The notes under the pieces were generated by a model. That model was not told the DNA's origin. It worked only from the letters and a program-made list of their open reading frames with translations, and searched no databases. A stretch of 64,000 nucleotides of DNA from Schmidtea nova (Eukaryota). The stretch lies in NCBI GenBank assembly GCA_044892505.1, contig CM097883.1:408456001-408520000 (forward strand), written 5' to 3'. Position 1 is the stretch's first letter, and each line of letters opens with the position of its first letter. A program made the translations under genes and the position numbers. Below are positions 970 through 55,213 of the stretch, in pieces.

Positions 970-1756
970 TTAAGTTGTTTCGACTGAACATCGTATAATA
1001 ATACAATCATTCCTAAGGATGGTCGGATCGTTAAATAAAGTTAATAAATTTATGAATTGAGTGTCTCCATAGCCTAAATTTATAGCGGTTTTTGGTTGAT
1101 AATATGAAGGTAGAAAACTTTTTTCTGCCGTCTCAAATTTGAATTTTTCCGTTGTGTGAGGGTGATTAGTTTCTTGATTGATCAAACTAATCGATATTTC
1201 ATTTTTCATGGGCCACGACAAATTATTATCGTATTCACCTTTGGCAATGTGAAAGAAAATCGATAAAAATGTGCCTTGTTCTGTATCAAATCCATCTGGA
1301 TAGATACCAAGGATTATTTTGTAACCGTTTTTGTGGGAATAGAAGTCATTGCTCATAATGTATGGATCGATTCCGTCTCGGGCTAATTTCCATTTTTTAG
1401 AGAAATTATCGATTTTCCAATTAAATGGAGAGAAATTGTTTTGTTCTAAGTAATAACCCTCTAAAAAACTGGTTTGTCTCAACAAATCAGGAGAATCTTC
1501 TTTATTATTATAGAATATTTCCTGAAATATTTTACTTATCTCGAGTGGAGTTTGTGGCTCTGTCAAATCTTGCATAAATTTCTTTATCATATTTTGAACT
1601 GACTCCTTGAATAACATTTGAAATTATATCAAAATCTCTAAATTTTACTTTGTTAGTTTCTGATTTTGCATTTAATATTTTTTTCATTTCTTTTTCAGTA
1701 GGTTGATTTTCAAGTTGTAATTGTTCGAGACGTATCTCTAATTTTGATATTAACTT
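970..1756 (-). CDS. TRAF-like gene, 3' part: coiled-coil exon 1756-1649 and MATH/TRAF-C exon 1605-970 (alternative acceptor at 1522)
   Basis: MATH motifs FNWKIDNF, SNDFYSHKNGYK, YPDG, FLSIFFHIAKGEYD...WP, YG...FI. Acceptor TTCAG at 1757, donor GTAAAA at 1648. A 43-nt or a 127-nt phase-0 intron joins the two overlapping ORFs. No upstream RING exon was identified. Confidence 0.8.
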
Positions 1757-2164: not shown

Positions 2165-3194
2165 TGTTACGGTAAATGTACATTACCAGGTAAATGTATA
2201 TATTTACCAGTAAATGTATACATTAACTGCAAGATTTGGCAAATGTACATATAACATACATTTACCGATTATTTAGTAATCATATATACTTTTACCTAGA
2301 TGTAATGGTAAAAGTGTAAAGGAATAAAGTTAATTATTCGAGTATAATATAATTGATAATAATGTTTATTATACCAAAACCAAAATTTCTTAATAATTGT
2401 TTTAAGGTTATGTTTATTATTTTATGTTTATGTTTTTAAGCGTAAATTAAAACTCAACAAATTTTCTAGACAAAATAATATTATAGATAACCAATTTCGA
2501 ACAGAAGAATTGGTCTTTTTTTTCTCTAGCTCCCAGTACGTTCTCATAAAAAATATTATGTTTTATGTTTATCTCTCTTTATTTTCTATTTCTATTGGTC
2601 TCTATTCTATTAAATTTTTAAAAAAAATAAGAAAAGAAGCACTGAGAAGAGAATTTTTATAAATCATGGGAGCTAGAGCTTGAATTTTTGCTTGTATGAA
2701 TTTGGGGATCTATAATAGTTATTTAGTCTGTGGTTATACTTATGTGCAGACATTTTATTGATATACCAGTTTAAAAGGACTTACGAGTTTTCCTCCTCAA
2801 AAATAAAAAGATAAATTGGATTTGAGAGTTTTTATTACATTTTTTTCGAAATAAAAACATAAATTCAATATTTTTCAAATACAAAACATAAAAAAAATTA
2901 AATGTCCTGAAATTAACTCCATCTATATGTTCGAAAAAACAATAATATATTTTTTAGGTAAAATTTTATTTGATATAAATGCCCCGAAGCCGATATGTAC
3001 TTTTCCCGGTACATATACATATTTGTCAATTATTTCTATATTTTACAAGACCTTGATATAATGTATACATTTACCCGTAAATGTATGTATAACAAACTTT
3101 TTCGAAATAGTAAACTTACATTTACCCATTGGTGTGGTCTATGTGTACATTTACCGGCGAATGTGTACATTTTGACATTTTGTACTATAACCGT

Positions 3195-3198
<4 letters not shown>
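2165..3198. mobile_element. Non-autonomous TIR element (1034 bp) in a TA run, with subterminal GGTAAATGTA arrays
   Basis: TGTTACGGT at 2165 and ACCGTAACA at 3190-3198, both flanked by TA. Several GGTAAATGTA-like copies on the left and TACATTTACC copies on the right. Confidence 0.75.

Positions 3199-3257
<59 letters not shown>
3199..3257. repeat. (TA)n microsatellite
   Basis: Pure TA run. Similar runs at 14992-15055, ~28737-28768, ~29709-29770, ~35004-35064 and 55126-55211. Confidence 0.95.
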
Positions 3258-3260
<3 letters not shown>

Positions 3261-3767
3261 CACAGGGTTCTTACTAGATACGCATCAGTATTAAAACCAC
3301 CATTATACTTTTCTATTATTATATTTAATCTATTATTTTAATTTTCCAGATTTATGTAATTTATATTCTTATAATTTATAACTTAATTCATTACAATCCC
3401 AATAATTTATTTTATTGTTTTAATCATTACTGATTTTATTTAGATTTATTTTTCATTTAGCTATATAATACATTATTTGTTTATTCTTATTCTTATTTTA
3501 TTTAATTGATTATTTTTATAAAGGATTTTACTTAATAATACATTTTATTAATATTTATTTGAAGGTGGAAGCGCTATAAAACACTAGACTTAAAATAATA
3601 ATTTTATTGATCCAACACAATTTTTACTTTTTTATTGTCCTTTCTATAAACAGCTATAATTTTTGAAAGCTGCATTTCTTCTCCATCAATCAGTATATGC
3701 TTTTTAATCACCACTCTCTCCTTTATTGTCTAAATTTGGTTTTCTTGAATAGATTTTCTCTTTCTAG

Positions 3768-4090
3768 CTCTCTATATTGTGCAAAAACACCTAAAAAGCC
3801 ATATTAGGGCTATTACTTTCGACAGATGGATTACACCAAGGGCGACTACAGTTGAGACCCAGGCGGATATCCTATCGACAGAGCATTCGGTAGAATCAGG
3901 AATAGTGGATGCGGTACAGCCAACATATCCCGCTCAACCAAAACCAAAAAAGAGAAATCGCTTAGGAGCGAAGAGGCGTTGGGAACGAAGGGCGTTTGCC
4001 GAAAAGATGAATATACAGGTTGACCTGTTAAGTGGCCTGTCGGAGAGACAATTGATAAACTTAATCGATACGTCCGTTTATATTAAATAA
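3768..4090 (+). pseudogene. 5'-truncated copy of unassigned cassette ORF2 (coiled-coil/basic protein)
   Basis: HIRAITFDRWI and KKRNRLGAKRRWERRAFAEKMNIQVDLLSGLSERQLINLI align with LIRTSTFDRWV...RNRLSAKRR...IEVELLSGLTEKQLLAVI (17.5-17.8 kb) and KRKRISQKRRRQKKLFAQRLQTQVDRLSSLTELDLLAEI (22.3-22.5 kb). Confidence 0.7.
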
Positions 4091-4210
4091 TTGTATTTAT
4101 ATTTTGTACATGACAATTAATTTGTGAGTGAATGATGGGTATGACAAAGCTGTATGATGAAGAATAGTTTGATGAGAGTTTAAAACGAAGGGACATAGAA
4201 TAAATCACTG

Positions 4211-4390
4211 AGACCTTCTATCGGCCAGAAAGAACCCTCAGGGGCAAGAGGGGAATAGTCACTGCGGAGTAGCTTACCTGCCCTCTTGACCTACACTGGT
4301 TAGTACATTTCCAACGTGATGTGCAATTAGGTGCAAATCACGGGTACTATCGCAGGGTTATAACTTTTTATGTTGGTGGAGTTACCCTAA
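4211..4390 (+). ncRNA. Conserved two-domain structured RNA motif, copy 1 (unassigned)
   Basis: CAAGAGGG-GAATA-GTCACT-GCGG-AGTAGC-TTACCTG-CCCTCTTG (4245-4288), then CCAAC-hairpin-GGG...TGTTGG...CCCTAA (4311-4390). Stems covary with three other copies. Confidence 0.6.
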
Positions 4391-5213
4391 TAATAACATC
4401 ATTTTTAAAAACTCCATGTTAAACACCACTAACAAACCAACAACTATAACGACTCCCACCCGTAAGTCACATGACAATAAAATCATTGGTTTCCGGAGTA
4501 GTTATGTGGGAGGTGAGCATGTGAATTTTCCCAGGAAACGAAATGACGACAAAAAATCTAGTATCCATTATCTCATATCCGTCAATGTCAGAAGAGAGAG
4601 AAATTTAGCTAAAATAACAGACAGCAGGAAACGCAGTTAGTTAAGTAAATAATCAGGCTACTAGGATTAATCTAAATTTTCGTTGAATTCATTTCCTGTA
4701 GATGTTCCATTAAGCAGATAAAATTTAAATCAAAGTGCGAAACTTGCCCCTGTTGGTCTCTGGTGTGGACATGGATATTTAAATGACGACCTAGGGGGTG
4801 GATGTGACCCATACAGCGAATTTGATAATTTCAAAGATTTTCAAATAAATTATAAACATAATTCGATTGTAATGTTCGTTGATTGACAAAACAAGGAAAG
4901 TAGCTTTATTATTTGTAGTGCTTAAAGCAGTTCTTTTGATTTGAATTTTTGAACATTTATGACAATACGAATTTCAACCTGAAAACTTTTTATCTTATAA
5001 AAGTTTTTTATTCTTGTCTTAAAAAATTAAATTGAAACCAAAAAATAATTTTTGTAACAAAATATGTTGCAATAAGAAATTTTCATATTAAGGTTCTTAT
5101 TATAATATTACTGAAAGATTAAAGCAATTGTAAAATTTTACTTATTTTCAAATTCTAAGCATTGTTAGATTATCTCAGACAATTAGAAATATTTTTTGCA
5201 ATATAAAAACATT

Positions 5214-5550
5214 AACTAGTAAATCAAAAAAAATTCTTTTTTCAAATCCATGCTTTATGCGAGCAGAACTCCTGAGAAATTTTTTTTTGCAATTTATATT
5301 ACATTTACACGCAAAATTTCTCTGAAGACACCAACACATTTACCTCTCGTCCATTGTTAAATGTATGGGGAAATTCAAATTGTTATTTAGTTAACTTAAT
5401 TAACTTTTTTTGGTCAAATTTATCAATTTCCATGTATTGTCACCGGAAGTGAGCAAGTGTGCAAAATTTGAAGTGAATCGGTTGAGAGAAAAGCACTAAA
5501 AATTGATTTGTAATTTTGTGGCACACACATATATATAGAAAGCAACCTTA
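5214..5550 (+). mobile_element. Helentron-associated (HINE/DINE-1-like) non-autonomous element, truncated by a Tc1-like insertion
   Basis: Starts AACTAGT...TCCATGCTTTATGCGAGCAGAACTCC and ends CACACATATATATAGAAAGCAACC. Near-identical inverted copy at 25955-26509 retains the subterminal IR ATAAAGCATGGA. Confidence 0.55.
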
Positions 5551-5552
5551 TA

Positions 5553-6670
5553 CACCAACAGTCTGCAATTAAGGGCCATAAAGACACTTATTGCAGTCAA
5601 TTGGTATTTATTATTACTTATTTTTTTAAATTAAATTTTTTATCTATGTATTTAAATTACTTTAACATATTTTAAGTTTATTTAATATTTTATGTTAAAT
5701 ACTTATTTATTTCATATAGATATTTTTTAGATATTTATGAAATTCAGAAAGAGGTAAGTAATTATAATTTTTATTCGGTAATAAAATTACATTTCCTTAT
5801 TTACATGTCTCCCAAGTCTTTGTAATTTTATCAGCTTATTTTTTAAACATTTGGATATTGTTTTTGTGTATACGTTGTAGCTAATTGTATTTAAGAAGTT
5901 TTTAATTTCTTCCAAAGTAATCCAATAATTTTGGTCCACAATTAATTCATTGTATTCCATTTTCTTCAATTATTAGGCTAACATTTTATTTGCCTCTTTT
6001 CCCTGCTGTAAGAATGCCATTTTTTCTACCTCGACTCTATGTCTTTAATAATCTTAGGTTCAAAACCTATTTACCTGCCGAATTCTTCATAAATTTCACG
6101 CCGTTTCATTACTTCTTTTAATAATTTTTTGTCATGTTCAGATTATCTATAAAATTTTAAGTTAAAAATTAAAAATTCAAATTTGTTTTACGTTTTTCGA
6201 TGTTTTCTTTCTACAGTTTCGGCCGTTTGAGGCATTATAGCTTCATTTTCTGCATTTCTAAAAATATTTTTTTAAAATTTTTTAATATAATTGTAAGTTT
6301 ACATTTCTTCTTGGTCCTCTCCAATAAATGGTACAGTTGATTCCAAAAACGTTTCTGAAATATCATCATAAATCATGATTTTTTAAAATTTTAAAATCCC
6401 TTAATTAAAGACTGTCCCTTAAATTATGTCCATGTGTTTGTATTTTTCATTATATACCAAAGCGCATAAATTAAGGGCCAGACAGGCAAAATTTAAAGTT
6501 TCTATAATAACAAATTATTTTATATATAGAAAAAATATACATACCTACTGCAGATTAGGACAAAGTAAAAAAGCACGGTCATAAATTACGGGCCTACACT
6601 ATAGAAAATAAGAAAAATTAATTAGGTCAAAAAAAACACACTTACACAACACACAAAAAATCTATAATGA
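5553..6670 (-). mobile_element. Tc1-like deletion derivative with its left ~215-bp arm inverted
   Basis: 5553-6450 is the reverse complement of 40890-41762, while 6453-6670 matches 40684-40895 in the same orientation. Transposase HTH remnant MEYNELIVDQNYWITLEEIK. Confidence 0.8.
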
Positions 6671-6671
6671 A

Positions 6672-6850
6672 CAAATCCCATTAATTGACTCCGCTCTGAA
6701 ACTCGAATACAGAGAAGACGGGCAGTCTTTTCCAATGTATGTGGCATTTCACCCATGGCGTTTGATAAAATAAATGAGAATAGAGCAAAGAACAATACAG
6801 AAAACTTAGAATCGCCAACAATCACACCAATTAGTTCATAAACAATAGAA
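6672..6850 (-). repeat. Fragment of hammerhead-bearing repeat family A
   Basis: AAATCCCATTAATTGACTCCGCTCTGAAACTCG... matches 33355-33535 and 48135-48250. Confidence 0.8.
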
Positions 6851-7744
6851 TAAGAGAAGGAATCAGCACGAATGTAAACCTCATCATTTAATCGAAATAC
6901 TAATTCGGCAATACAAAACTCTACATTTAGAATTATAAAAATTATCTTTCATTCTAGACATTAATAATCCAATCAGAAGCAATACAAAGTCTAGGTGGTT
7001 ACGCCTTTCAATCTTCAATTCTAGAACGTCAATCCAAGTTCTTTGATCAATGAATCGAACATCTTCAATCTCTACAAATACAAATTAAAAATACAAATTA
7101 AAAATACAAATTCATTAAAAATAATTAATAAATTTATTTGACTAATGGGAAATCCGAGCTGACAGCAAAATATATAATAGAATTATTCCATAAAGCCGGA
7201 CAATAAGTGACTAGACGGTTAAAATAAATTATTAAGGGAGAGTGCCCAGTTTAAAGGCAATGTCGCCTGGCTAATTGTTTTGTTTTACGCTTGAGTTATT
7301 ATCAGATTATCAAAGAACCCGATATAAGGAATTATCTATTTTGCTAGTTGGTTCAATATACATTGAGAGAATCGATTGATTTGAAAGAGAAGTCAGAGAA
7401 AATAATAAAGTTTTAGCGAATCAAATTAATTAAAAGTTGTACCATAAAAGGCAGTTTTCGTTGGAAGTACCTACCTTGTCTCTTTTAAATTAAAAAATAT
7501 AGATAAAAATATAATTGTTCTTGACAATATTCAAAAAATTTATTGCGTTGAGTGTATTGTTCTTTTTTTAATAAATAGCACATGGAGTCAAAATGTGGTA
7601 CCGACTTCATTAAATATCCCAAAAAGTATTATGAAAATGAATGTTAAAAGTAGGTCGATTATTGCCTAGCAACAATTAAATTAATTCATCTAATATAATT
7701 ATTTTTTAAATCAATATCAATATTGCAAATTATATATAGGTTTA

Positions 7745-9109
7745 ACCGGAAAGTTTCTGCAGTTAGAAAAATTAATGCCATTCAAGTTTCTGCAGTCACA
7801 TTGATCAATGAATATATATTTAACAAAGACAAATAATTTTATGAAGCAAATTAATCATCCATATCATCGAGGAACTCAAAATAGTTTCCACCATGCTGGA
7901 TGCAACGTTGCCAACGTGCAGGGAGTTTGTTAATGCCAGCTGCGAAGAAATTTTCATTTTTATTCTCTAACTACGACTCTAGCTGCACTTGAACATCTTG
8001 TGCGCAGTTGAATGCCTTACCACGTAGAGCTGATTTAAGTGAGGAGAAGAGGTAGAAGTCTGATGTGGCTAGATCAGGTGAGCAGGGTGGATGTGGTACG
8101 ACATTGAGATGAAGTTCAGCCAGCTTCGCCTGAGTTAGATGAGCGGTATGTGGCTTAGCATTGTCATGCTGAAGGTAATGGTATCCATCCAACATTCGTC
8201 TGCTCCTTTTATCCAGCAAGCATCCTTCAAATTGTCAAGCAATCAGCAATAATGGTTGGCATTCATTGTTGCACCGCAAGGTAAAACATCCATTAAAATG
8301 ACCCTCCTGCAGTCCCAAAAAATTGTTAACAAATGTTTCTTGCTGGTAAGACTGCCTCTCACCTCGGTATGTGGTTCGCTATGATCGATGGTGTTTGCTC
8401 ACACTTCCATGCCAGTAGACCCAACTTTCATCAATGGTGATCATACGATGCAGGAAATTGTTTTTTTCATACATTTCCAGAAGTATTCTGCACACATCCA
8501 CTCTTTTTTCCTTTTGTGCGTTCGTTAAGAACTGTGGAATCCACACTGTTGAAAGATATCACTTTCCCATCTTTAGTAGATGACTTCTCACTGTCTCTCT
8601 TCCAACTTGTAACTTAAAAGCAATTTCTCTAACAGAGGCATGATGATTCTCATCAAGAATTGCTTCAATCTGGTCATCTATGTCACAGGAAGGTCGTCCA
8701 CTTCGTGCGTTGTCGTTTACGTCGAAATTTTCCGCCTTGAATTTGGCAAACCATTCATAGCATGTTCGAATACTCACTGTTCCTTCCCCTAGTGTGTTGT
8801 TGATTTCTTTTTCGATGTCTCTGGTTGATAGGCCTCGTTTCCAGCAGTAGTAAATTAGTTTTCTAACGTCTTCGCGAATAAAATCCATGATTTTTTCAAT
8901 TTAAAGCCAAATTCTGCATAAACGGAAAAAGACAATATAAACAAATTAAACAGTTTCATTAAAATGACATTGATATTCTTAGATTTTTTAAACTAAATTT
9001 CGTTTATAACATCAAAAATTATCCTTCTTTGTGTCCACAAAATTTGAAATATATAATATGCATAGATCTTGAATGGCATTAATTTTTCTAACTGCAGAAA
9101 CTTTAAGGT
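7745..9109 (-). mobile_element. Full-length mariner (Mos1-like) element with a disrupted transposase (8888 to ~7850)
   Basis: TA-flanked TIRs ACCGGAAAGTTTCTGCAGTTAGAAAAATTAATGCCATTCAAG and CTTGAATGGCATTAATTTTTCTAACTGCAGAAACTTTAAGGT. HTH ORF (YEWFAKFK...RSGRP), LQHDNAKPH and HPPCSPDLATSDFYLF motifs; frameshifts and stops. Confidence 0.92.
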
Positions 9110-11696: not shown

Positions 11697-12620
11697 TTAA
11701 GATTTGTTGACAGTAACAGTAAAAGCAGGTATAACCGGAAACTGTCTTCTGTTTAGCGCGAATTGAAGGTTATTGCCCTTAGGTGCTAGGTCTACCCGAG
11801 GTATGTTCACGATTTGGCCTTGATTACACACTGAAATAATTTCTACTGTGATTGAGTAGCGCTGAAGACTCCTAACAATCAAACAGGTTCCATTGCAAAG
11901 TCTTCTTTTTGCTGAAAGATTACGAATCAAGTTGATAAGGACTCCTGGTTTTTGAATTAGTTGATGAGGCGACATTCCAAAAAGACAGAGAGTTTGTGTT
12001 TAAATATTCTTTTGGATAGTTGGTGGCATCATTGTGATCATATGAGACGATCTAGTCTGTGATGTAGCCGATACGTTCGTTGCCGGGTTGCTGCTTAATT
12101 ATTTCCTTGTTTATATTTAAGCAAACATTATTAGCGGACGCCAACACCACTCTTTTTATTAGTTCATCAGTCGACAGTTGTTGGATATTCTTTTCGTAGA
12201 TGGTTTCCACAATCGGCTTGAAGTTACTATGTCCTTGGTAATTTCAATTGCTACATCAGGAAGTCAATTAGTTGTTTGAGTTGTTCCAGATCCAATTTCC
12301 AAAAGCCAGTTGTGGAAATCATGTTGACCTTCACTTCTCATGTTGTTTGTAATTGATAACTTTATAAAACGTTTCCACAGATCGGGCGATTTTATGCACC
12401 ATTCGATAATGTCAACTTTGCTTCCACGAGTTACTACAGTTAACGTTTGTCGAAAATCTCCTCCTGTCATTATTAATTTCTCTCAAAACGGTATTTCCAC
12501 TTTTAAAAGTTCTTATAAAAATTGATCGATACAACTAGAACCATGTTTATCCGTGACTGTACATTCATCTATTACACCGTGTTTCACTCAGTAACATCAG
12601 CTATAATGCACGTGAATGTG
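11697..12620 (-). pseudogene. Helitron PIF1-like helicase remnant
   Basis: Motif II (IDECT), GGDFRQTL...NNMRS and RNLSAKRRLCNGT...IPRVDLAP...RRQFPVIPAFTVTVNKS, broken by frameshifts. Confidence 0.85.
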
Positions 12621-14991: not shown

Positions 14992-15057
<66 letters not shown>

Positions 15058-15197
15058 ATTAACCATTTCTGTGGTTTTTTCTCTAACTTGTATTCATTTC
15101 CTCCATTATTAAATAAATGATTTCTTTGAAAAAATGCAATAACAAAAAATTATCAAAAATTAATTTTTTTATTTAAATTTATTTACCATTTATCCAG

Positions 15198-15916
15198 AAT
15201 CAAATTAATTCACTAACACAACAACTATCTAAACTCCAAAATGAATCACAAAATTCAAAGAAAGAAAAGCTAGACAAGCAAAAGAAAAATGTTTGTACTA
15301 AACAAAAATGATTACATCAAATAATAATGTTCTCCTTTAGACCAACCTTGGTGCCTCGTCAGCAAATGACCAATTAACCGATTGCACTAAAATCAAAAAT
15401 GAAATTCAGTACCCCATTATCGAATGTACAAATATCATAAACGGTGTACGATATTCCCCATTTATTTGGAGAATTGAAAATTTCTCCGCTAAAAAAAATA
15501 CAGCGAAAAATGTCTGCGATTCGTTTATTTTAAGTGATTCATTTTATTCACACGTGAATGGATATAAACTTTGTTTGACTCTTTTTCCTGACGGTTCAAA
15601 TGTGTCACAAAATGATTGGCTGTGCGTTGGATTTCATTTGATGCAAGGTGAATACGACAAGGATTTGATTTGGCCAATGATGAGGAATGTGACGATTGGA
15701 TTGGTTAATCAGAAATCCAATGAAAGTTATGTGAGCGAAACATATAATGTCAGTTATGCTCCTGAAAATAGTAGATACAAATTTTTTAAGCCAACTTGCG
15801 GGTTGAACGAAGCTTTTGTTGCGTATAAATTTGTCAAATTCAGTGAGTTGACATCCAATGGAAATCTGTGTAGGAAGGAATGTATTGTTATCAAATGCAT
15901 TGTAGAAAAGAATTAA
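15198..15916 (+). CDS. TRAF-like 3' half: coiled-coil exon 15198-15290, 50-nt intron, MATH exon 15341-15916; inverted duplicate of the gene at 27014-27717, no RING exon seen
   Basis: CAG/GT/TAG splice sites, all phase 0. MATH motifs PFIWRIENF, SDSFYSHVNGYKLCL, GEYDKDLIWP. Confidence 0.82.
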
Positions 15917-16486
15917 ACGAATTCGAATTTCGAATAAAAATGGATTTGATATCATTTTTCTTGATTTTTTAGCAGATTTCCATTTTAATGTTTAATATAG
16001 ATTGGCATCATTTGTCTTTTTTAATGGAAATATTTTTGTATTAAATGGTAAATAGTCAAGTAAAAATATTTGGAACCGGCCAATTTGGATATAGATGATT
16101 TGGATAATAAATATTAAATAGAAACAACTTGCACGAGAAAGTTTTTCTTGAAAAATGTTTTTTTTGAAATAATGTTTTTAATTGATGAAAATATTTGTGT
16201 ACGGCATTTTTGAATGCTGATTCCAAAAAAGAGGTTAAATTGTCCCTCACGTCCGGTTTTTTTTATATAAAACGATATCGAAAATGAGTAAAAAGGTTAT
16301 TTTGAAGTAAAATCAGCCTAATGTAAACAGACAGTCAAAGATAATTGAATTACACAAAACTGTAAATGTTACTACTGCTAATATTCGTGAGTATAATCAA
16401 AAGTCACATTAAAGAGTTTCTAGATAGAAGTGTTGGTTGTGCGTTGAGAAAATTCAAATTAATATTGTTATTAATCAACGGTCACG

Positions 16487-16613
16487 CAACAACACATAAA
16501 TGTTCCCTGTGCGTATAACCGTATATACTTTACTGTATACACGTTGGTACTGTATAAGACAGTCTAATGCAAGTCGGCAGGTGAGCGCCTTTGTTAGAGC
16601 TACTCCCGGCTTG
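16487..16613 (-). ncRNA. Conserved structured RNA motif, copy 2
   Basis: Minus strand CAAGCCGG-GAGTA-GCTCTAACAAAGGCGC-TCACCTG-CCGACTTG (16613-16570), then CCAAC-GTGTATAC-AGTAAA-GTATATAC. Confidence 0.5.
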
Positions 16614-17170
16614 TCATTCTGGAAGGTTTCATGCCGCAGATAAAATTTCTTACGCGTCTAAATATTTTTTATTTCCAAAGGTCCTTTAAATTTATCAATA
16701 CCTAACTTTTAATATCAATACTCATCTTATTTAAAATATTGCACCTATTTATCCTAAGAATCTTTATCGTTTTCTCCCTACCTCAACTGACTTATAAAAT
16801 GTGGTTCGTAATCCTACTATTAATGCTTCTATATCGTATATACTTTCATGCTATTTTCCTGTTTAATGCTCTTATGTGTTATTGTGCGCTTTAAATTGTC
16901 CTCTTTTTGTATTTATTTAAATTTTGACGTATTTAAGCAAAAATCGAGCCTCACTTTTTCCAGCCCAACAGAAGAATTATTATTTTGCAACAAACAAAAA
17001 TTACCCATTAATACTTGGATATGCCCGGCCTTCTGTAAAGATTCTCAAGAGACTATGGTCTGGTTTTATTTCATGTCATGTCTCTCAAAGTTCATTTCGT
17101 CAAGAATTATCTTTACTTTTGCTTGTTTGTTGGTTAGAATTTCAATGGAGGTTATACTTGATTTTATAGG

Positions 17171-17344
17171 TTAGGGTAACCTCGCCAACATAAAAACGCT
17201 TCCCCGCTGACACCCATGATGTATCCCTAACTACTCATCATGTTGGAACTGTGTCAACGTTGTGAAATGACAAGGCAGGTGAGCAACCTTGCGGCTACTA
17301 TTCCCTTGTTTATTCACGAGTCCACTACTACCGTTAGAAGGTCT
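17171..17344 (-). ncRNA. Conserved structured RNA motif, copy 3
   Basis: Minus strand AGACCTTCTA, CAAGG-GAATA-GTAGCC-GCAA-GGTTGC-TCACCTG-CCTTG, CCAAC-ATGATG...TTAGGG...CATCAT-GGG...TGTTGG...CCCTAA. Confidence 0.62.
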
Positions 17345-17539
17345 GTGTGGTTTTCTTCCGGTCCCTAACATTAATTTAAGTTCATTAGGTCTAGGGTGCA
17401 TTTACTTGCTTTATATCCTTTGGCCGAAAATGAATTGGTTTTTTTCAATCATTCCATTTACTTAAATTCACATTCATTTCTCATACATTCGTAATACTAC
17501 AATTGAACTATGATACTTTTATTTCAATTTATCAATACT

Positions 17540-18077
17540 GCGGGGTTAATAACAGCCAGTAATTGTTTTTCGGTAAGACCGCTCAGGAGCTCTACTTCGA
17601 TCTAGATTCGTTCTGCATATTCCCTTCTTGCCTTCTTTTAGCGCTTAACCGATTCCGTCCTTTAGTCCGTTTAGACCCTTAGGTTTTCGGAGTACTTTCT
17701 GGGGGTTCTGGATTCGAGTTCAAAATCATCTCCGTCTGTACGCCCATCGAGACGCTGCTTGATTTTACCCATCGATCAAAGGTGCTGGTTCGTATGAGTG
17801 GCCGTAATTGCTGTTCAATGAACTCCTTAGTAGAAGCCCGCAGATAATTACTTAATTCCAACTTTACAGCGGCCGTCTTTCGCGCTTGCTCTTCCGCTAT
17901 TCTTTCGGCACGATATCTAGCCTGTTGTATGACCTTTACTCGTTCCGGGTGGAACCAAGTCGATTTTATTAATTGATGTTCGGCATCCAACTGCCGAAAT
18001 CGACCTTCAAGAGCCTTGACTCTTTTCTTAGCTTCCTTAGCCTCTGCTCTTTAGTCGTGGGTCTTGGCGGCACACAT
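17540..18077 (-). pseudogene. Cassette ORF2 (coiled-coil plus basic C-terminus), with stops and frameshifts
   Basis: TTTCAG acceptor immediately before 18077. WF...R.K...RA.R.AE...K.EL..YL...IE..LR..IR...WV pattern shared with 21883-22476. Confidence 0.7.
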
Positions 18078-18333
18078 CTGAAACGAGAAAATGAGTAGAT
18101 TAGTATGTTCTCTGCAACCACATTTTTCACGCATCTCGCTCATTCTCATAGTTTACATATCGTCGTCATTTACAATTGTGCACAGTTAAGTCACGCCCCG
18201 AGGTCATTAATCTCTTTAACGACATCACCCCCTTTCTTTATCTCATACATTCCAATCAACTACAAAATTCACAAAATCATTTATTTATTATTCATGAACA
18301 GTAATCAGTCTATCCCAATGATGCGATGAATTT

Positions 18334-19055
18334 TCACAGATATTCGACCAGTTCTTGGTCATAGGCTCGATCCATTAGTCCTCTGCCATTGGTTTGATAG
18401 ATTTTTGTGCAGGGCTCCCAGCAAAGTCCATCTTGGAAGATGAATACTTCCCATAGTCGAGTTTCTTCCTCCCACTGCTGCGGATTCATATTCCTGTTTC
18501 CTGGGGCATTGAGATACGGATGGAGTGTACCCGTGTAGATACATATTGGCTCATTCAACAGGATATAGTCTAGCTGGCGGAATTCGGGCCCTGACATGGA
18601 GTTGAATGACAATACCCATCGGGGTTTGGCCTGGTGGTCCTCGAATTGGATGAACCATTTCGGCTGCCTCGGCACTTGAATGCTTAGCGATGTCGGCCAC
18701 TATGGGTCACCTTCCCACCGATTTCGGGTTTTGAAGAATGATGTTACCGGTTGCACGTCTGGATCTATATGGCTACGGTTCCACTCCCTGAGGTGGCGTT
18801 CTGCCACTTTTCTGATGGCTTCAGGAATTGTATTTGCATCTACGAATGTTAGTTTGCGCGACTGAGCTCGCAAGGGTCGTGACTTTCTTTTTTCTGGCAT
18901 CTGAATGATGGTGGCTATTAGTTTTCATCTAGTTTACGTCATCACCTCCACATTCATCCACTCTACTCATCATTCCTCATATTAGGTCATTCATTCATAC
19001 ACCATCAATAAAAAGTTTTACTTACCAGTACTTCGATTTTCAGTTGATTGTACAT
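18334..19055 (-). pseudogene. Cassette ORF1: short exon 19055-19026, intron, then 18900-18334 with one in-frame TAG
   Basis: The listed ORFs 18700-18900 and 18334-18675 share a frame. Donor GTAAGT at 19025, acceptor CATTCAG directly before ATG at 18900. Confidence 0.55.
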
Positions 19056-19630: not shown

Positions 19631-19867
19631 TCGCGACTCAAAAAGCCCAAAAAACAACAAAAAAGAAAAAAAATCATTTTTATTTCTTGCTTCTTTCATT
19701 GAGAAGACATTGATAGAAAATACATCATTAATATTTTTCGAAAAACATCAACTTGGAATAAAAAATAAAATAGGCAACCAGGCATGAGCCGGTGCAAATG
19801 ATATACAAAAAAATGACACGGCAAAAACAATCAATTTGGCATACCAAAAATACAAAAATTGATAATA

Positions 19868-20445
19868 GTTTCTCTGGATAAAATTAATACTTTATACTAA
19901 TTTTAAATAAGTCAAATTTTATTTTTATGACAAACATTTTCTTTTGGAATTTTCTCATTTAAGTTACTAAAATTAAAGTAATTAATTATAAAATTCTTTG
20001 AATTTTTTAATTTTTAAATTACTTTCTTTTATTTGGTGTTTCAGAATACTTTTTTTATTTTTTTATTATCAAATCTTTATATTTTATTTTAATTTTAACT
20101 ACTTTAATTTTTACAATTTACTTTTAAAATTTTTCTTATGGGTGATAGTCGCAAAGTTTCTCTGGATAAAATTAATACTTTATACTAATTTTAAATAAGT
20201 TAAATTTTATTTTTATGACAAACATTTTCTTTTGGAATTTTCTCATTTAAGTTACTAAAATTAAAGTAATTAATTATAAAATTCTTTGAATTTTTTAATT
20301 TTTAAATTACTTTCTTTTATTTGGTGTTTGAGAATACTTTTTTTATTTTTTTATTATCAAATCTTTATATTTTACATTAATTTTAACTACTTTAATTTTT
20401 ACAATTTACTTTTAAAATTTTTCTTATGGGTGATAGTCGCAAAGT
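19868..20445. repeat. Tandem duplication, 288-bp period
   Basis: TCTCTGGATAAAATTAATAC at 19871 and 20159; the units are near-identical. Confidence 0.9.
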
Positions 20446-21239
20446 TCCTGTTTGATGTTGCATCATTTACGTATAGCCGGGGCTGAGGATAATTGATTAA
20501 ATAAAATAGCGTTTCATGGACACATGGTTTTCTAGTTTTAATCTCGCAAAGGGTTGTTTTCCTACCACTCAAGAACGGCAGCGCATGGGATATGTAGTAA
20601 CTCTCAGACAATATATTAGGACGAGGGGGAAATGGGGAAAATAAATGGATTCCGAACATAATGACTAATAGAATTTACCCTGCAGAGGTAGACACAGATT
20701 TTCTCAAGTTTATCGCGCACCACTTTAAATCCACACGACATTTACATGACCAAAATCGACTGATCGGAAGCAGCCGAATAAATTTTCATACTGTAAATAG
20801 AACTAATCGATATTTTTCATCAAAAATAAACAAATCAAGTGAGGGTAACTTAAATGTCCAAACAATAATTCAGACACATGCATCAAAAACTTCATAGTAA
20901 TGAATGTCAAGTCCTGAACTCGGATACAAACAGTCGATTTGATTATACACAATTAACGCTAATAATCCTGATCGCTTTAGATAGCGCAGGAGTTTAACGA
21001 GAATTTTTATGATATTTATCCGGATCGCTGTATATAGCGCAGGGAATATATGAAAATAAATTAGAAATTATTCCGATTGTGGTATATCGCAAAGGTGTTG
21101 ATTGAACCAGTAGATTTTTTGTTCTTTTTCCAAATATTTGATTTCTCGCTATAATTTCATGGAGTTTTCTATAAAATAACTCAAAATCTTGATTAATCAA
21201 CCAGTTAATTCGTTAATCCTATTATGGTAATAATGCAGA

Positions 21240-21589
21240 TGGAACCAAATGATGTAGAGAAATTCCTAACTACTCATAGAGAGTCGTCCAAATCCGTCAA
21301 GGCCGGACCCTCTAGGATACTTCGAATGGGGCTAAAAACCTTACCATCATCAATACTGCGGACCGTAAATGCACAAATGTTTAAATGGCGGAGGGAATTT
21401 GGAAAGAAATGCTCGTTCTCCATTTGGAACACCGGCAAGGATCTCGTGTTGTATCGGGGAGGCCCGGGGTGGCCGATTTCCAACCAGAACTACTCATCAA
21501 AGTTTGGACGACTGATAATTACAATAAATGACCGAATCGAGAACCAGCTAAAACTGTTTATTGGGGACATATTCCGCAAAGTGAAATAG
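21240..21589 (+). pseudogene. Cassette ORF1, second copy
   Basis: AATGCAG acceptor directly before ATG GAA CCA. Weak colinear similarity to the 18.9-kb ORF1 (TLPSSI..W.R vs TIPEAI..W.R; GGPGWP vs GDP*WP). Confidence 0.45.
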
Positions 21590-21882
21590 CAGAATTGGGC
21601 CTGCAATTATTGACATCGCCTCGGCCCCTTGGAGATGAATACGAACAGAGCCAACCGAAGTTTTCCCTGAGCAATTTACGTCAATCACCAATAAATCAAG
21701 GGCTTCATGTTGCCTATGTTTTTAGAACAAATTTTCCATTTCATAAATCCGTGTGTATTAGTACAAAATAAATAATTGCGTTTAACTTTCTTATTTTGTT
21801 TCTTGTATTAAGCAGTTATATGCATAGGATCAACTATTCTGAACTAAAATGATAAAATAATCATTTACTTAACTATTTCAGT

Positions 21883-22476
21883 ATGAACTCAGAAACTCAT
21901 CAACAGAAGGAGATCGAGAAGTTATGGTGAATCAAACGGGCTCAAGAGAAAGAGCTGGTTCAAGTAAAAGCCCAGTTATCCAAAGCTGAGGCGCAAATAA
22001 CCTATCTACGAAAAAGTTGGTTTGCTACTGCCAGGATGAAGGATCGAATTTCCTGAACAGAAAGGGCACAACGAACTGCAGAGGACTACAAGTTGGAGTG
22101 GAAGGCCACAAAGATCGAGTTGAGAAAATACCTCCACTCGGTAACGACTTTTTACATTGAAAAGGAGTTGAGGTCGCAAATCTGACCCGTCACTTATCAA
22201 AGTTGGGTGATGGAGCAAAGAACCATGTGCTCGATTGGTACGGATGTCGAAGGACTATCAGATGGGAAAATAGACAACGCCCAGCAGGCTACGAAGGACG
22301 TTCCCACGAGCAACACGCATCTGAAGCGAAAACGGATCAGTCAAAAGCGCCGACGTCAAAAGAAACTTTTCGCCCAGCGGCTCCAGACCCAAGTAGATCG
22401 TTTGTCGAGCCTAACGGAACTCGATTTACTAGCCGAAATCTTTCCACCAGAAGGAACTTTCACCGAATTGTTATAG
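21883..22476 (+). pseudogene. Cassette ORF2, 197 codons with three in-frame TGA and no frameshift
   Basis: TTTCAG acceptor at 21876-21881. TGA at 21928, 22054 and 22183. Aligns along its length with 18077-17540. Confidence 0.72.
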
Positions 22477-22649
22477 TTAATAAAACTTTATACGAAGTGT
22501 GCCGAGATCTTTGTTGTTATTTGGGAATCCTCTCTAATTATAATGCAATTAAACAAAACGTAACTAATTGTAACAATCACATTTTTGGTAAAGCTAAATA
22601 ATAAATAATAAACACATACGAAATACATTAATGAATTAGTAAATAAAGC

Positions 22650-22837
22650 GTCAGACTTCCTAGCGGCAGCATGAACCCGTGAACATAAATGGGGAGTAGT
22701 TCTAGTAATAGAGCTCACCTGCCCATCATTGTTCAATCACCTTGCGCATCACCAACTTGGTTATATAGGGAAATAATCAAGGGCGCTCGAGTGAGAAAGA
22801 AACTACTTATGCATGATCATGGATGTGGTATCCCTAG
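22650..22837 (+). ncRNA. Conserved structured RNA motif, copy 4
   Basis: ATGGG-GAGTA-GTTCTA-GTAA-TAGAGC-TCACCTG-CCCAT (22689-22726); CCAAC-TTGGTT..TAGGG..AATCAA-GGG...TCCCTAG. Confidence 0.6.
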
Positions 22838-23220
22838 CCACTATTAGAAATTATGGTCTAACCCCTCCATGAACCCAGCATTTGTACGAAGTCTTAAAAT
22901 GAAAAGTTCTGTAATAGAAACGCAGTGATCAAAGGTGAAATAAAGAGATAAAAATGCTAATATTTTCTATATAAATTAAATTGAAACGCTTTTATAATTT
23001 TTGTAAATTGTTGTCACTTTCCCCGATCCCTAAAAAAAGACTTTTTTTAAATTGCAATTATTAAAAATAATTTCTTAAATAGTTTATTTCTTTTTTAAAC
23101 GAATTGTCGAAATATGCCTAAGAATAGCAAGAATTGCTAACTATATATCCGCATTAAAAAAAGATGAAAATACAAAATGTATAGAATGATAAATCGCAGA
23201 ATTAAAGAAAGGAAATAGCG

Positions 23221-24560
23221 ATGAAAAGATGTGCCTAATATTTTACGGAGAATACAGTGATGATTACGCAATACTTAATGAATGCAAGCATGAGCTGTGC
23301 AAGGAGTGATCCGCTGAAATCACCTTCAGATCGGAGCCTCGCTGTCCACTTGACAGAAATTCAATTCAAACAAATCCTGTCACTTCAACTGCCACCCTGA
23401 CTACCATCCTCGATTTCAATTGTTGAATACCAAAACGCAATTCTCAATTTAAAACCGAAGCAATTGATGGGATAAATTGATAATATTTGGTCAAGTTATT
23501 TCACGGATAATGACAGTTTTTACATTTGATGCAGAAATTGACGGAAAACTGCCGAATTCTGCACAAAAATTGACTTGAACAAAATATCACAATCGGAAAT
23601 GAGGAAATTTCAATGATTTCAGACTTTCTGGACTACTTTAACAAAGCCTTCAGGAATTTCGAGGACTTCTCATCACTTGAAATTGAGAAGAAAGAGGTCT
23701 TTGAGAGATGAATTTATTCGTTGTCAGAAACTGCAAACAGTCTGTGCCTCATCAACCTTATCAATATTGATAAGGTACGTCGTAACTTATTCTTCACAAA
23801 ACTGAACAGCATACGATTTTAAACGTAATCTGGTTCAAGAAAACATCAATGTTCTACAAAACGATCTGGACCTGATAGAATAGTTGAAAATGTATGATAA
23901 TCGAATTGGTAACGAACAACGAAGAGACTTAAAGAAACCTGGAAAAGACAATTAATTTTACTGATGTCGATAAATGTTTGATCTGCACAGAAATGATCGA
24001 TGCAAAACGCTTTGCCGGATTTCCGAAATGTGATCACAAAATATGTTTAGCTAACATAGATAAATTCATCATTACCCATGGTAGTTGTCCGTTTCATGAG
24101 TGTCATTTGTTCAATCTTAAGGTGTATAGAATTTCAAAACTGTTGTATTTTATCGAGAGATTTGGTGTAGAACTTCAAGGTAAACCTTTAAATCACAAAA
24201 AGATAAGAATGTGGATAACGTCGATAGTATTTGCGTTCCGGAATTTACCCAAGTCCGCTTTCTATCATTTCCACGTTCAACGTCGGTCAAAGTTTTTTCT
24301 TGTCAATTACTAGTATGTTTGCAACGAAATTCTCTCAGAATTCTCCTTTTACTTCAATCTATCCAGAGATGGGGGTAATTCTCTGCGATTTAATAAAACT
24401 TACAGAAGGTTACGATCCTTTCTCATATCACTTGTCGAGGTTCGAGAATTATTTTCGGAAATTTAATATGGACAAATCAAAATTGATATCAGACCTAGAG
24501 ACACTTCTCCATTTTGGGGGATATCTGGCAATTTCTCGATAAATGGTTCCCCGGTCCCCA
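23221..24560 (+). pseudogene. Degenerate, apparently intronless ORF with two RING-finger-like motifs
   Basis: MCLIF...ECKHELCKE*...RCPLDR (23.23-23.36 kb) and KCLICTE...KCDHKICLAN...SCPFHEC (23.97-24.11 kb). Confidence 0.55.
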
Positions 24561-26927: not shown

Positions 26928-27013
26928 ATATTAAATATTAAAATGGAAATCTGCTAAAAAATCAAGTAAGAAAAATGATCCCAAATCCATTTTTATTGGA
27001 AATTCGAATTCGT

Positions 27014-28730: not shown

Positions 28731-28769
<39 letters not shown>

Positions 28770-29705
28770 CAGGTTTAGTCAAAAGTTATTCATGTTTTTA
28801 TGTGAATATTTTATTTACACTAATTTTAACAAACACTAATCATAACAATAATCTATAACGCCAATAATATGATTATTGTTTCTAAAAATTATAAGTTAAA
28901 AATCATTATTCTGTAAAATGTTATAAATTATCATTAAAACTCACTTTCCTAAAATTATAATATAGAAAAGATAATAAACAAAAAAATGGTTAAAATTTAA
29001 AACTATTTATTATGTTTTAACCATGTTTTAAAGCTATTTTAGCATATTTTAAATTTATTTAAAATTTAAAATTAAATATTAATTATATATACTTACTTAT
29101 AGGTTAAAAACCCATTTGACAACCAAATTCTTGATAATCTTCATCCTGTTCCACTTCAATAAATATTTTTTTTCCTGTACTGTATGTCTATGAATGTTGA
29201 AAATTCAAATTTATTTTACGTTTTTCGACGTTTTCCTTCTACCGGTTCGATTGGTTAAGGCATAATAACTTTATTTTCTGCATTTCTAAAAATATTTTTT
29301 TAAATTTTTTAAATATAATTGTAAATTTTCATTTCTCCTTGATCATCTCCTATAAATGGTATTGTTGATTCCGACGAAGCTTCTAAAATGTCTTAGTAAA
29401 TCATTTTATTTTCTGTTTTTATATTCCTTAATTAAAGATTGTCAATTAATATTTGTCCCTGAATTTTTTATCATAGGGTTTTTGTGTGTTTTGTAAACCA
29501 AATTTATTTTTCAGCTCTTCTACACTATAAGTCTCTAATTTATCACTGCACATAATTTGTGTCCTTATATTTTTTCCTATAATTTAAATTGTTATTATAG
29601 ATAACCTTAATTGTTGTCTATCTCGTCATTAATTTATGCTCTTTAGTGTATATATAATTCGAAATATTGATTTTGATTTATAAATAATTATATAAGATAA
29701 ATATT

Positions 29706-29771
<66 letters not shown>

Positions 29772-31024: not shown

Positions 31025-32066
31025 TGGTAAAAATTTAAATCAAAATTAATCGATATTAAATAATATATATTTACCACAAATTTGAAAATAGTCGACAACA
31101 GCGCGAGACCTTGAAATCAGTCAATTGATGTAAATGTAGAATGAATTATATTGAAAATTTAATTTATCATACTAATTTAATTATTAAATTCAATGATTAA
31201 TAATAAATATAAAAATTATTAACAATTCGATATTTTTAAATCTTAAATTAAATATCTTTAAAAAATTTATAACTGTAAAATTTTGTGATGATAAAATTTA
31301 CAATAAAAATGAAAATTTATCCATAGTAGATATGTAATCGTGTAAATTCTGAAACAATAGACTCAACTTCGATTAAAAATAATTACAATATGTCGACCTA
31401 AATTAAAAAGATAATTAATAAAAGAATGTATTAAGTTGATTGCAAATCACTTACCAATCATTTAAAATTAATTGAAAAAACACGCAATCAAAGTGATTAA
31501 TAACAACTATTTGATACTTATGCTTCACTAATTGCTTAAGAACACAATTTCTTGCCATTGCTATTTTACTGTTCATATCCATTGACCCTTAAACTTAAGT
31601 CTCATTCCATTAGATGGAATACATGTGACTCGAGTTGGAAAAGACTGGGTGTGCCGTATTTTGTAAAAGAAATTGCTTCGGTGTTTGAGAATAAGTCAAG
31701 CTACAAATTCATTATTTTAGACATCTACTTCATTATTGTCCCGGACTTCTAATTCGTGACAATCTTTTGATGGGGACAAAATTATATGCTCTTACTGGGT
31801 TGTTGGCGTTGCTGTGACTCATCATTAACAACACAACACATAAAACATTTATCAAAACCCTCTTATTGCCAGTCACAGTGTAACGTTGGTAATGCAACAA
31901 ATGGGTGGATGTCCCCAAAACAGTGAGCGTCGAAAAATCGAAACTATGAATGATCGAACATCACAGTGGGTTCAAGAGCGACTCATAGAAGGTTCAATGC
32001 CCATTTTTAATCCCTCATTATATCATAATTATGTCTAATTTATCATCCATCTACATCTATAATTTT

Positions 32067-35002: not shown

Positions 35003-35067
<65 letters not shown>

Positions 35068-55120: not shown

Positions 55121-55213
<93 letters not shown>

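What the first reader, a model, noticed from the sequence alone, without database searches (positions are those of the whole stretch)
4245..4288. Covarying RNA domain 1: stem, conserved GARUA/UYACCUG internal loop, GNRA-type hairpin (four copies)
Four diverged copies (4245-4288 +, 16570-16613 -, 17271-17308 -, 22689-22726 +) keep the internal-loop strands GARTA and TYACCTG. The outer stem changes compensatorily: CAAGAGGG/CCCTCTTG, CAAGCCGG/CCGACTTG, CAAGG/CCTTG, ATGGG/CCCAT. The inner hairpin also covaries (GTTCTA-GTAA-TAGAGC, GTAGCC-GCAA-GGTTGC, GTCACT-GCGG-AGTAGC). G-U pairs and GNRA loops favour folding on the ORF strand, downstream of ORF2. I do not recognise it as a known ribozyme or Rfam family. 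Best candidate for a novel functional RNA in the window.
Basis: partly seen in the sequence, partly recalled or inferred. Interest (0 to 1): 0.82.

Follow-up and report, generated by a model that had tools for sequence, protein, structure and literature searches.

The report
Conserved structured RNA tail, orphan element
A hairpin with an invariant internal loop is real and is one of three domains of a ~250-base folded RNA that follows two small orphan genes in five very diverged copies; it matches no catalogued RNA family and is probably the protein-binding 3' handle of an undescribed selfish genetic element.

Summary
The stems differ between copies but still pair: 86% of cells pair, against 36-46% in slid controls, and 7 of 15 pairs change on both sides. 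The hairpin is only domain 1 of a ~250-nt, three-domain RNA conserved in all four copies. A fifth, decayed copy lies at 31780-32010(-). In three copies it follows a ~190-codon ORF2 (coiled coil, basic stretch, leucine-rich end). Two of these also have an ORF1. The ORFs are GC-rich in an AT-rich host, recently broken, and have no detectable relatives in Pfam, PDB or 1.8 billion protein representatives. Rfam gives no match, and pattern scans of viral and metagenome collections gave only chance hits. My best reading (0.42) is a cis-acting, protein-recognised 3' module of a multicopy selfish element, working like stringent LINE/SINE or R2 3' tails. No reverse transcriptase, target duplications or terminal repeats were found, so membership of those families fails. 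Eukaryotic repeat libraries could not be searched, so novelty is provisional.

The parts
4245..4288 (+). Domain 1 hairpin, copy 1 (the finding): 8-bp stem, GAAUA/UUACCUG internal loop, 6-bp inner stem, GCGG loop
16570..16613 (-). Domain 1 hairpin, copy 2 (one C-A mismatch in the outer stem; irregular inner hairpin)
17271..17308 (-). Domain 1 hairpin, copy 3 (GCAA loop, continuous 7-bp inner stem)
22689..22726 (+). Domain 1 hairpin, copy 4 (GUAA loop)
4196..4450 (+). Whole conserved RNA module, copy 1. It holds the 5' motif AGACCUUCUAUCGG, domain 1, domain 2 (stem, 8-nt 5' bulge with CCAAC, hairpin), domain 3 (GUUGG/CCAAC closing helix plus hairpin) and an A/C-rich tail
16420..16665 (-). Whole RNA module, copy 2 (no ORF upstream)
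17108..17352 (-). Whole RNA module, copy 3
22645..22885 (+). Whole RNA module, copy 4
31780..32010 (-). Fifth, decayed copy of the RNA module. Domain 1 is lost, the domain 2 architecture and flanking motifs are kept, and there is no ORF upstream
3785..4090 (+). ORF2, copy 1: only about the last 100 codons are present (5'-truncated), with no internal break
17524..18077 (-). ORF2, copy 3 (~185 codons), broken by 2 in-frame stops and 1 frameshift
21883..22476 (+). ORF2, copy 4 (~195 codons), broken by 3 in-frame stops
18334..18900 (-). ORF1, copy 3 (~185 codons), broken by 1 in-frame stop
21239..21589 (+). ORF1, copy 4 (116 codons, open). Its N-terminal ~85 residues are weakly similar to copy 3 ORF1

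Best explanation
The hairpin is domain 1 of a ~250-nt, three-domain RNA that forms the 3' end of a small multicopy genetic element. The element's order is ORF1, an AT-rich spacer, ORF2, 120-180 nt, then the RNA. I read the RNA as a cis-acting handle recognised by protein. The invariant single-stranded letters would be the contacts: GARUA/UYACCUG in domain 1, the CCAAC bulge in domain 2, and the 5' motif AGACCUUCUAxCGG. The freely covarying stems would only hold them in place. The most likely job is to mark the transcript for the machinery that copies or propagates the element, as the 3' tails of stringent-type LINE/SINE pairs and the R2 3' UTR do for their reverse transcriptases. The basic, leucine-ended ORF2 protein is a candidate second binding partner. 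What is shown: the structure, its conservation, its strand, its position after ORF2, the foreign base composition, the deep divergence of the copies and the recent decay of the ORFs. What is inferred: that a protein binds it, that the element is or was mobile, and that copying goes through RNA.
For: Structure. The full model has 36 pairs with 90.9% of cells paired, against 34-41% in slid controls, and 21 pairs changed on both sides against 6 or fewer. Each copy alone folds into the same domain 1 plus domain 2 architecture. The decayed copy 5 still shows the domain 2 architecture with different letters. The pattern of variable stems with fixed loops is the one described for stringent LINE/SINE tails (PMC3747384, read). 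It also fits the R2 3' RNA of 284 nt, which has helices H0-H5 and little sequence conservation (PMC11194090). Non-coding. Every frame of every copy has at least 2 stops, and there is no 3-base periodicity. Linkage to the ORFs. The ORF2 C-terminal region is homologous in copies 1, 3 and 4 (blastp E 9e-10, 2e-6, 3e-4). Its stop lies 120-180 nt before the RNA. Signs of a selfish element. The copies share the 3' module but differ in how much lies upstream: two have both ORFs, one has a truncated ORF2, and two have the RNA alone. The ORFs are 0.45-0.52 GC in a 0.25-0.30 background, while host MATH exons are about 0.30-0.35. The copies are 40-63% identical yet still pair, so they diverged under selection. 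Each ORF-bearing copy carries only 0-3 breaks per ORF, so inactivation is recent. The surrounding window is a graveyard of mobile-element remnants.
Against: No reverse transcriptase, endonuclease, integrase or any other Pfam domain was found in the ORFs, and no RT was found anywhere in the window. I found no target-site duplication and no empty paralogous site. The 3' boundary is not sharp, and there is no poly(A) or microsatellite tail. An AATAAA or ATTAAA lies 7-20 nt before the RNA in 4 of 5 copies, which could cut the RNA off from the ORF2 message. Each ATG directly follows a CAG acceptor-like site, and AT-rich spacers are retained, which looks like host-style processing. Five mutually distant copies within 30 kb would also fit an old local gene cluster. 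There are only 5 sequences, all from one window.
Confidence: 0.42

Rival explanations
1. The module is a free-standing non-coding RNA gene, or a non-coding third cistron of an operon-like unit. It belongs to an old local gene family. Each copy is kept by selection in place, and the ORFs are neighbours or accessory genes.
For: AATAAA or ATTAAA lies just upstream of the module in 4 of 5 copies, and a second AATAAA lies 30-50 nt after it in copies 1, 3 and 4. That would release the module as its own RNA. Copies 2 and 5 have the module without ORFs. All copies lie within 30 kb, are 40-63% identical and still pair. All four ATGs follow acceptor-like CAG sites, as in operons resolved by trans-splicing.
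Against: No promoter or terminator signature of a small-RNA gene was recognised, and there is no Rfam match. The ORF2-module linkage is kept in three very diverged copies at a similar distance. The GC-rich ORFs look foreign to this genome. Copy 5 has decayed, so selection in place is not general.
Confidence: 0.2
2. The module is a regulatory 3' UTR element of an ordinary but fast-evolving host gene family. It would control export, localisation, stability or translation of the message. The gene's own ORF2 protein, with its arginine-rich stretch and leucine-rich end, might bind it in the manner of Rev with the RRE, or it might act as a constitutive transport element.
For: The module sits in the 3' UTR on the coding strand. 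ORF2 has a conserved basic stretch followed by a leucine-rich C-terminus. A stem with invariant internal-loop letters is the usual form of a protein-binding site. The unit keeps spacers and acceptor-like sites, so its RNA may need help to leave the nucleus unprocessed.
Against: Every ORF2 in the window is broken or truncated. No homologue of ORF2 exists in 1.84 billion protein representatives. The only Pfam trace of REV is E=0.54, which is noise. The bZIP-like hit in PDB is E=0.45, also noise. The composition differs from host exons.
Confidence: 0.15
3. The module is a self-cleaving ribozyme that trims the element's transcript. Related cases are HDV-like ribozymes at retrotransposon 5' ends and hammerheads in Penelope-like elements and retrozymes.
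For: It is a compact multi-helix fold with invariant unpaired letters. It lies next to processing signals. A long-range pairing is possible between the domain 2 CCAAC bulge and GUUGG of domain 3.
Against: No hammerhead, HDV-like, twister, pistol, hatchet, hairpin or VS match appears even at E<=10 in any copy. At 250 nt it is large for the known small ribozymes. No conserved candidate cleavage site can be named from five sequences.
Confidence: 0.07
4. The conservation has nothing to do with RNA folding. It would reflect an exon-intron junction or coding exon on the opposite strand (the reverse complement of the loop strand reads as a 5' splice site), or DNA hairpins of a transposon end.
For: The reverse complement of GCTYACCTGCC is a good 5' splice-site consensus (from established knowledge; a lead only). 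Watson-Crick stems are symmetric between the two strands.
Against: All six frames have at least 2 stops in every copy, and there is no codon periodicity. Stems change by double substitutions, which a splice site or exon does not require. There are 10 G-U cells against 3 A-C, and folding is stronger on the ORF strand in 3 of 4 copies. Homology runs for 250 nt with three separate helical domains.
Confidence: 0.03

Closest known systems
3' tails of stringent-type LINE/SINE pairs (for example the eel UnaL2/UnaSINE1 stem-loop and plant L1-clade tails; review PMC3747384)
   Same: The module lies at the 3' end after the last ORF. Its stems vary with compensatory changes while loop and flank letters stay fixed. 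Short ORF-less copies share only the tail with longer copies.
   Different: Those tails are usually single stem-loops of 40-80 nt. They end in short repeats or poly(A), and they follow a reverse-transcriptase ORF. Here the unit is ~250 nt with three domains, no terminal repeat was seen, and no RT lies upstream or anywhere in the window.
R2 retrotransposon 3' UTR RNA (Rfam R2 RNA element; R2Bm 3' RNA of 284 nt, helices H0-H5; PMC11194090, PMC10499050)
   Same: The size class is similar (~250-280 nt) and the fold is multi-helix. Sequence identity between lineages is very low while structure is kept. It is a cis-acting protein-binding template signal downstream of the ORF.
   Different: R2 sits in 28S rDNA behind one long RT/endonuclease ORF. 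This window has no rRNA and no RT, Rfam gives no hit, and the upstream genes are two small orphan ORFs.
Retroelement RNA export signals bound at internal loops (Rev/RRE type, constitutive transport elements)
   Same: A stem displays invariant internal-loop letters in the 3' part of an incompletely processed transcript. An element-encoded small protein carries a basic stretch and a leucine-rich end.
   Different: There are no retroviral genes and no sequence or profile similarity. This is a likeness of layout only, recalled from general knowledge and not tested.
U1 snRNA 5' end
   Same: The 3' loop strand UYACCUG is the same splice-site-complementary heptamer type that U1 uses. Copies 1 and 4 carry a matching complementary stretch downstream (4511-4518, 22933-22938).
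   Different: There is no U1 match in Rfam at any threshold. No Sm site or U1 stem-loops are present, and the heptamer is internal rather than at a 5' end. I treat this as a lead only.

Membership tests
Any Rfam 15 family (4227 models) | Covariance-model score at or above the family's gathering threshold | tested here: not met
   The whole window gives 0 hits at gathering. E<=10 scans over all four good copies give only scattered, unrelated, sub-threshold hits, and none recurs between copies.
Stringent LINE 3' tail / R2-type 3' UTR | Lies directly downstream of an ORF encoding reverse transcriptase | tested here: not met
   Pfam finds no RVT or endonuclease domain in any upstream ORF piece at E<=1, nor in the other ORFs of 95 aa or more that were scanned.
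Stringent LINE 3' tail / R2-type 3' UTR | Structure conserved through compensatory changes while primary sequence drifts | tested here: met
   21 of 36 pairs change on both sides. Pairwise identity is 40-63%.
Stringent LINE 3' tail / R2-type 3' UTR | Copies share a precise 3' end, are 5'-truncated to varying extents, and are flanked by target-site duplications, often with a terminal repeat or poly(A) | tested here: inconclusive
   Variable 5' extent is seen. However, the 3' boundary is fuzzy, there is no terminal repeat and no convincing duplication, and no empty site is available.
SINE | Pol III head derived from tRNA, 7SL or 5S | tested here: not met
   ARAGORN finds 0 tRNA-like genes in the window. 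Rfam gives no tRNA, 7SL or 5S hits.
Small self-cleaving ribozymes (hammerhead, HDV-like, twister, twister-sister, pistol, hatchet, hairpin, VS) | Match to the family's core fold and catalytic letters | tested here: not met
   None is listed even at E<=10. Cleavage itself cannot be tested with these tools.
U1 snRNA | 5'-terminal splice-site-complementary sequence followed by four stem-loops and an Sm site | tested here: not met
   Only the heptamer is shared. There is no U1 hit in Rfam.
Operon resolved by spliced-leader trans-splicing | Each downstream cistron starts just after a 3' splice acceptor, preceded by the upstream gene's poly(A) signal; mRNAs carry a spliced leader | tested here: inconclusive
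   A CAG acceptor-like site lies directly before all four ATGs, and AATAAA-like signals lie in the spacers. Spliced-leader use needs transcript data, and the organism is not identified.
bZIP / Rev-like basic-region proteins (for ORF2) | Significant profile match to the basic region plus zipper, or to Rev | tested here: not met
   Pfam REV gives E=0.54 and there is no bZIP hit. PDB ATF-2 gives E=0.45. Both are noise.

The most novel reading that the evidence does not exclude
A previously undescribed class of small, polymerase-less, two-gene selfish element (or endogenised virus-like replicon) of an AT-rich animal. Its defining part would be a ~250-nt three-domain RNA that displays a U1-like splice-site-complementary heptamer in an invariant internal loop. 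That RNA sits between two poly(A) signals. It would be a new RNA family that may engage the host's splicing or 3'-end machinery rather than a reverse transcriptase.
Probability: 0.12. Interest if true: 0.85.

Novelty: new variant of a known kind. Interest (0 to 1): 0.6.

Why it matters
Structured 3' RNA modules are how many retroelements and RNA replicons identify their own template, yet few have been defined outside R2 and a handful of LINE/SINE pairs. This one shows unusually clear covariation across very deep divergence. It is attached to two orphan proteins with no relatives in 1.8 billion protein representatives, and no polymerase is in sight. If a census confirms the family, it offers three things. 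First, a new RNA family with a well-defined protein-contact loop. Second, a marker for annotating an unclassified repeat or virus-like family in an AT-rich animal genome. Third, a test case for how polymerase-less elements persist. If the module turns out to be the tail of a repeat already catalogued in Dfam or Repbase, the structural model still adds the missing RNA-level description.

Tried and rejected
I scanned Rfam at gathering over the whole window and at E<=10 over all copies and found nothing. ARAGORN found no tRNA or tmRNA.

Pattern scans gave nothing real. IMG/VR returned 1 and then 11 chance hits in phage-like contigs. JGI metagenomes returned 0 and then 9 chance hits in GC-rich bacterial contigs, none with flanking stems. 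Re-scoring them with the covariance model left only the selected motif itself.

The proteins stayed open. Pfam on 38 ORF pieces found nothing in the element's ORFs. PDB sequence searches gave noise. A word search with a copy 3 ORF1 piece gave nothing. AlphaFold of the intact copy 4 ORF1 reached pLDDT 46, so I ran no fold search.

Identifying the organism failed. MATH and TRAF ORFs hit only unnamed metagenome and Logan proteins at 45-82% identity. Exact-protein look-ups found nothing useful.

Target-site duplications and empty sites were not found. Flanks have no paralogous uninterrupted copy, and the one segmental duplication ends before copy 2.

I rejected several ideas. SECIS, histone stem-loop and kink-turn fail because their motifs are absent in some copies and Rfam is silent. 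CRESS-DNA and deltavirus-like origins fail because there is no Rep and no delta-antigen or ribozyme match. An LTR origin fails because the two same-strand copies, 440 nt apart, are only about 49% identical. A variant genetic code fails because all three stop codons interrupt the frames while host ORFs read normally.

One search used a structure string that I had mis-registered by two columns. It scored like the slid controls and served as an accidental negative control.

Full report
1. The observation.
The four hairpins are at exactly the stated coordinates. Each has the 5' loop strand GARUA and the 3' loop strand UYACCUG. In every copy, 13 nt separate GGGARTAG from GCTYACCTGCC. The combined pattern occurs 4 times in the window and never in 100 dinucleotide-preserving shuffles. 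Seven pairs change on both sides, against 0-3 in the slid versions. A string that I mis-registered by two columns behaved like the controls. The loops are GCGG, GCAA, GUAA and an irregular 6-nt loop in copy 2, so 'GNRA-type' is true for two copies only. Folding each copy alone also reveals a third, outer helix of 4-6 bp that differs in sequence between copies.

2. The hairpin is part of a larger RNA.
Homology runs for about 250 nt: 4196-4450(+), 16420-16665(-), 17108-17352(-) and 22645-22885(+). RNAalifold predicts three helical domains. Counted on that alignment, 36 pairs are 90.9% paired, against 34-41% in slid controls. Of these, 21 pairs change on both sides, against at most 6 in the controls, and no shuffle out of 500 reaches any observed measure.
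- Domain 2 is a stem with a conserved 8-nt 5' bulge ending in CCAAC and a 5-9 bp apical hairpin whose letters differ in every copy.
- Domain 3 is a hairpin closed by a GUUGG/CCAAC-type helix. Copies 2 and 5 lengthen this helix on both strands.
- An invariant motif, AGACCUUCUAxCGG, precedes domain 1.
A profile HMM and a covariance model (R1, domains 1+2) recover the four copies at E of 1e-25 to 1e-56. Both also point to a fifth, decayed copy at 31780-32010(-). That copy has lost domain 1 but still folds into the domain 2 architecture with new letters.

3. It is RNA, and it is non-coding.
Every reading frame of every copy has at least two stops. Variable columns are spread evenly over the three codon phases, at 0.69-0.73. 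In the stems there are 10 G-U cells against 3 A-C cells. On the opposite strand they are -1.9, -1.4, -2.0 and -1.6. The three ORF-bearing copies all have the RNA on the coding strand.

4. What lies around it.
Immediately upstream in copies 1, 3 and 4 is a homologous reading frame (blastp E 9e-10, 2e-6, 3e-4). It has about 185-195 codons: a coiled-coil-like N-terminal half, a conserved TFDRW-type motif, a basic stretch, and a leucine-rich end. Its stop lies 120-180 nt before the RNA.
Copies 3 and 4 also carry an upstream ORF1 of 116-185 codons. The two ORF1s are weakly similar over their first ~85 residues (and by eye). An AT-rich spacer of about 260-290 nt separates ORF1 from ORF2.
All four ATGs directly follow a CAG acceptor-like site, like the acceptor of a neighbouring host exon.
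Counts of breaks:
- Copy 3 ORF1: 1 stop.
- Copy 3 ORF2: 2 stops and 1 frameshift.
- Copy 4 ORF1: none.
- Copy 4 ORF2: 3 stops.
- Copy 1 ORF2: 5'-truncated.
- Copies 2 and 5: no ORF.
The ORFs are 0.45-0.52 GC in a 0.25-0.30 background, while host MATH exons are about 0.30-0.35.
An AATAAA or ATTAAA lies 7-20 nt before the RNA in four of five copies. A second AATAAA lies 30-50 nt after it in copies 1, 3 and 4.

5. Relatives.
I found none.
- Rfam gives no match at any threshold.
- Pfam, PDB, a word search and a profile search of 1.84 billion protein representatives leave ORF1 and ORF2 as orphans.
- Pattern scans of IMG/VR and of JGI metagenomes returned only chance matches in prokaryotic contigs.
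- The organism could not be named. The window looks like an AT-rich animal genome with a TRAF/MATH gene cluster and remnants of mariner, Helitron-like (Pif1), Maverick-like (pPolB) and other DNA elements.
No eukaryotic genome or repeat library was available. This is the main limit on any claim of novelty.

6. Interpretation.
The copies are 40-63% identical yet keep about 90% of their pairs, so most of their divergence happened under selection for the fold. The long, nearly open ORFs in an AT-rich genome show that the proteins were also under selection until recently. Three further points fit insertions from several deep lineages of a selfish element, or an endogenised replicon: the foreign composition, the shared 3' module with varying upstream extent, and the transposon-rich setting.
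The conservation pattern is fixed unpaired letters on variable stems. That is the pattern reported for stringent LINE/SINE tails (PMC3747384) and it fits the R2 3' RNA (PMC11194090). I therefore read the module as a protein-recognised cis handle, most likely for template recognition.
Membership in those families fails on the defining feature that could be tested. There is no reverse transcriptase upstream or in the window. I also found no target duplications or terminal repeats.
The upstream poly(A) signal and the clustering keep two alternatives alive: a free-standing non-coding RNA or third cistron (0.20), and a host 3' UTR regulator possibly bound by ORF2 (0.15). A ribozyme (0.07) and non-RNA explanations (0.03) are less likely.

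7. Verdict.
This is a real, well-supported structured RNA of unknown family. The finding's 44 nt are its best-defined domain. Interest is moderately high at 0.6. I class it as a new variant of a known kind (cis-acting structured 3' modules of selfish elements), provisional until repeat libraries and the full genome are searched.

Noticed in passing
window 31780-32010 (-): Fifth, decayed copy of the RNA module. Domain 1 is lost, but domain 2 with its CCAAC bulge and the copy-2-like extension of domain 3 are kept. No ORF2 lies upstream.
   Followed up: yes
window 4199-4204, 22642-22647 (+); about 20 nt before copy 2 and 12 nt before copy 5 (-); second signal at 4476-4481 (+), 17065-17070 (-), 22939-22944 (+): Poly(A)-signal hexamers bracket the RNA module. 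One lies 7-20 nt before it in 4 of 5 copies, and another lies 30-50 nt after it in the three ORF-bearing copies. In copies 1, 3 and 5 a 4-5 bp stem (GAAGG/CCUUC type) could hold the upstream hexamer in a loop.
   Followed up: partly
window 4495-4501 and 4511-4518 (+); 22933-22938 (+): Downstream of copies 1 and 4 there is a short stretch complementary to the domain 1 loop strand UYACCUG; it also reads as a 5' splice-site-like sequence. In copy 1 it is preceded by a second GGAGUAG. This could be a long-range pairing, a real splice donor, or chance.
   Followed up: no
window 18898-18903, 18075-18080 (-); 21236-21241, 21880-21885 (+); 19020-19055 (-): All four ORF start codons directly follow a CAG acceptor-like site. 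Upstream of copy 3 ORF1 there is a possible 30-nt in-frame mini-exon ending at a GTAAGT donor. This suggests host-style cis- or trans-splicing of the unit.
   Followed up: partly
window, domain 2 bulge, domain 3 5' strand and 3' tail of each copy: CCAAC is invariant at two places, but there is only one GUUGG-like partner. This allows either a nested closing helix or a pseudoknot or switch. Five sequences cannot decide between them.
   Followed up: partly
window 970-1623 (-), 15341-15916 (+), 27014-27589 (-), 50360-51004 (+), 57982-58587 (+), 23933-24310 (+): A cluster of TRAF-like genes (RING, TRAF zinc finger, coiled coil, MATH domains). The closest database proteins are unnamed metagenome or Logan sequences at 45-82% identity.
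   Followed up: partly
window 15167-15998 (+) and 26928-27748 (-): An inverted segmental duplication of a MATH exon and its flank at 92% identity. Patchy continuation runs to 16155 on one side and 25437 on the other, and it stops before RNA copy 2.
   Followed up: yes
window 62361-63998 (-), 61256-61888 (-): A 520-545-codon open frame with a protein-primed type B DNA polymerase domain (Maverick/Polinton-like) lies next to a GIY-YIG nuclease ORF. Masked N runs are nearby.
   Followed up: no
window 8562-8900 (-), 53290-53637 (+), 11700-11999 (-), 52735-53025 (+): Remnants of DNA transposons: a Mos1-type HTH and a mariner transposase fragment, a Pif1 2B domain (Helitron-like helicase), and an ISXO2-like DDE fragment.
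   Followed up: no
window 19867-20446: Two copies of a 288-bp tandem repeat (98% match, about 15% GC). It lies between the heads of the divergently oriented copies 3 and 4.
   Followed up: partly
window 5213-6858 with matches at 25967-26510, 40682-41767, 29100-29652, 33119-33674, 47899-48257: An unrelated dispersed repeat family (75-98% identity), showing that the window is repeat-rich.
   Followed up: no
window 3193-3262, 14992-15063, 28733-28776, 29708-29770, 35004-35071, 55124-55211: (TA)n-type microsatellites recur through the window.
   Followed up: no
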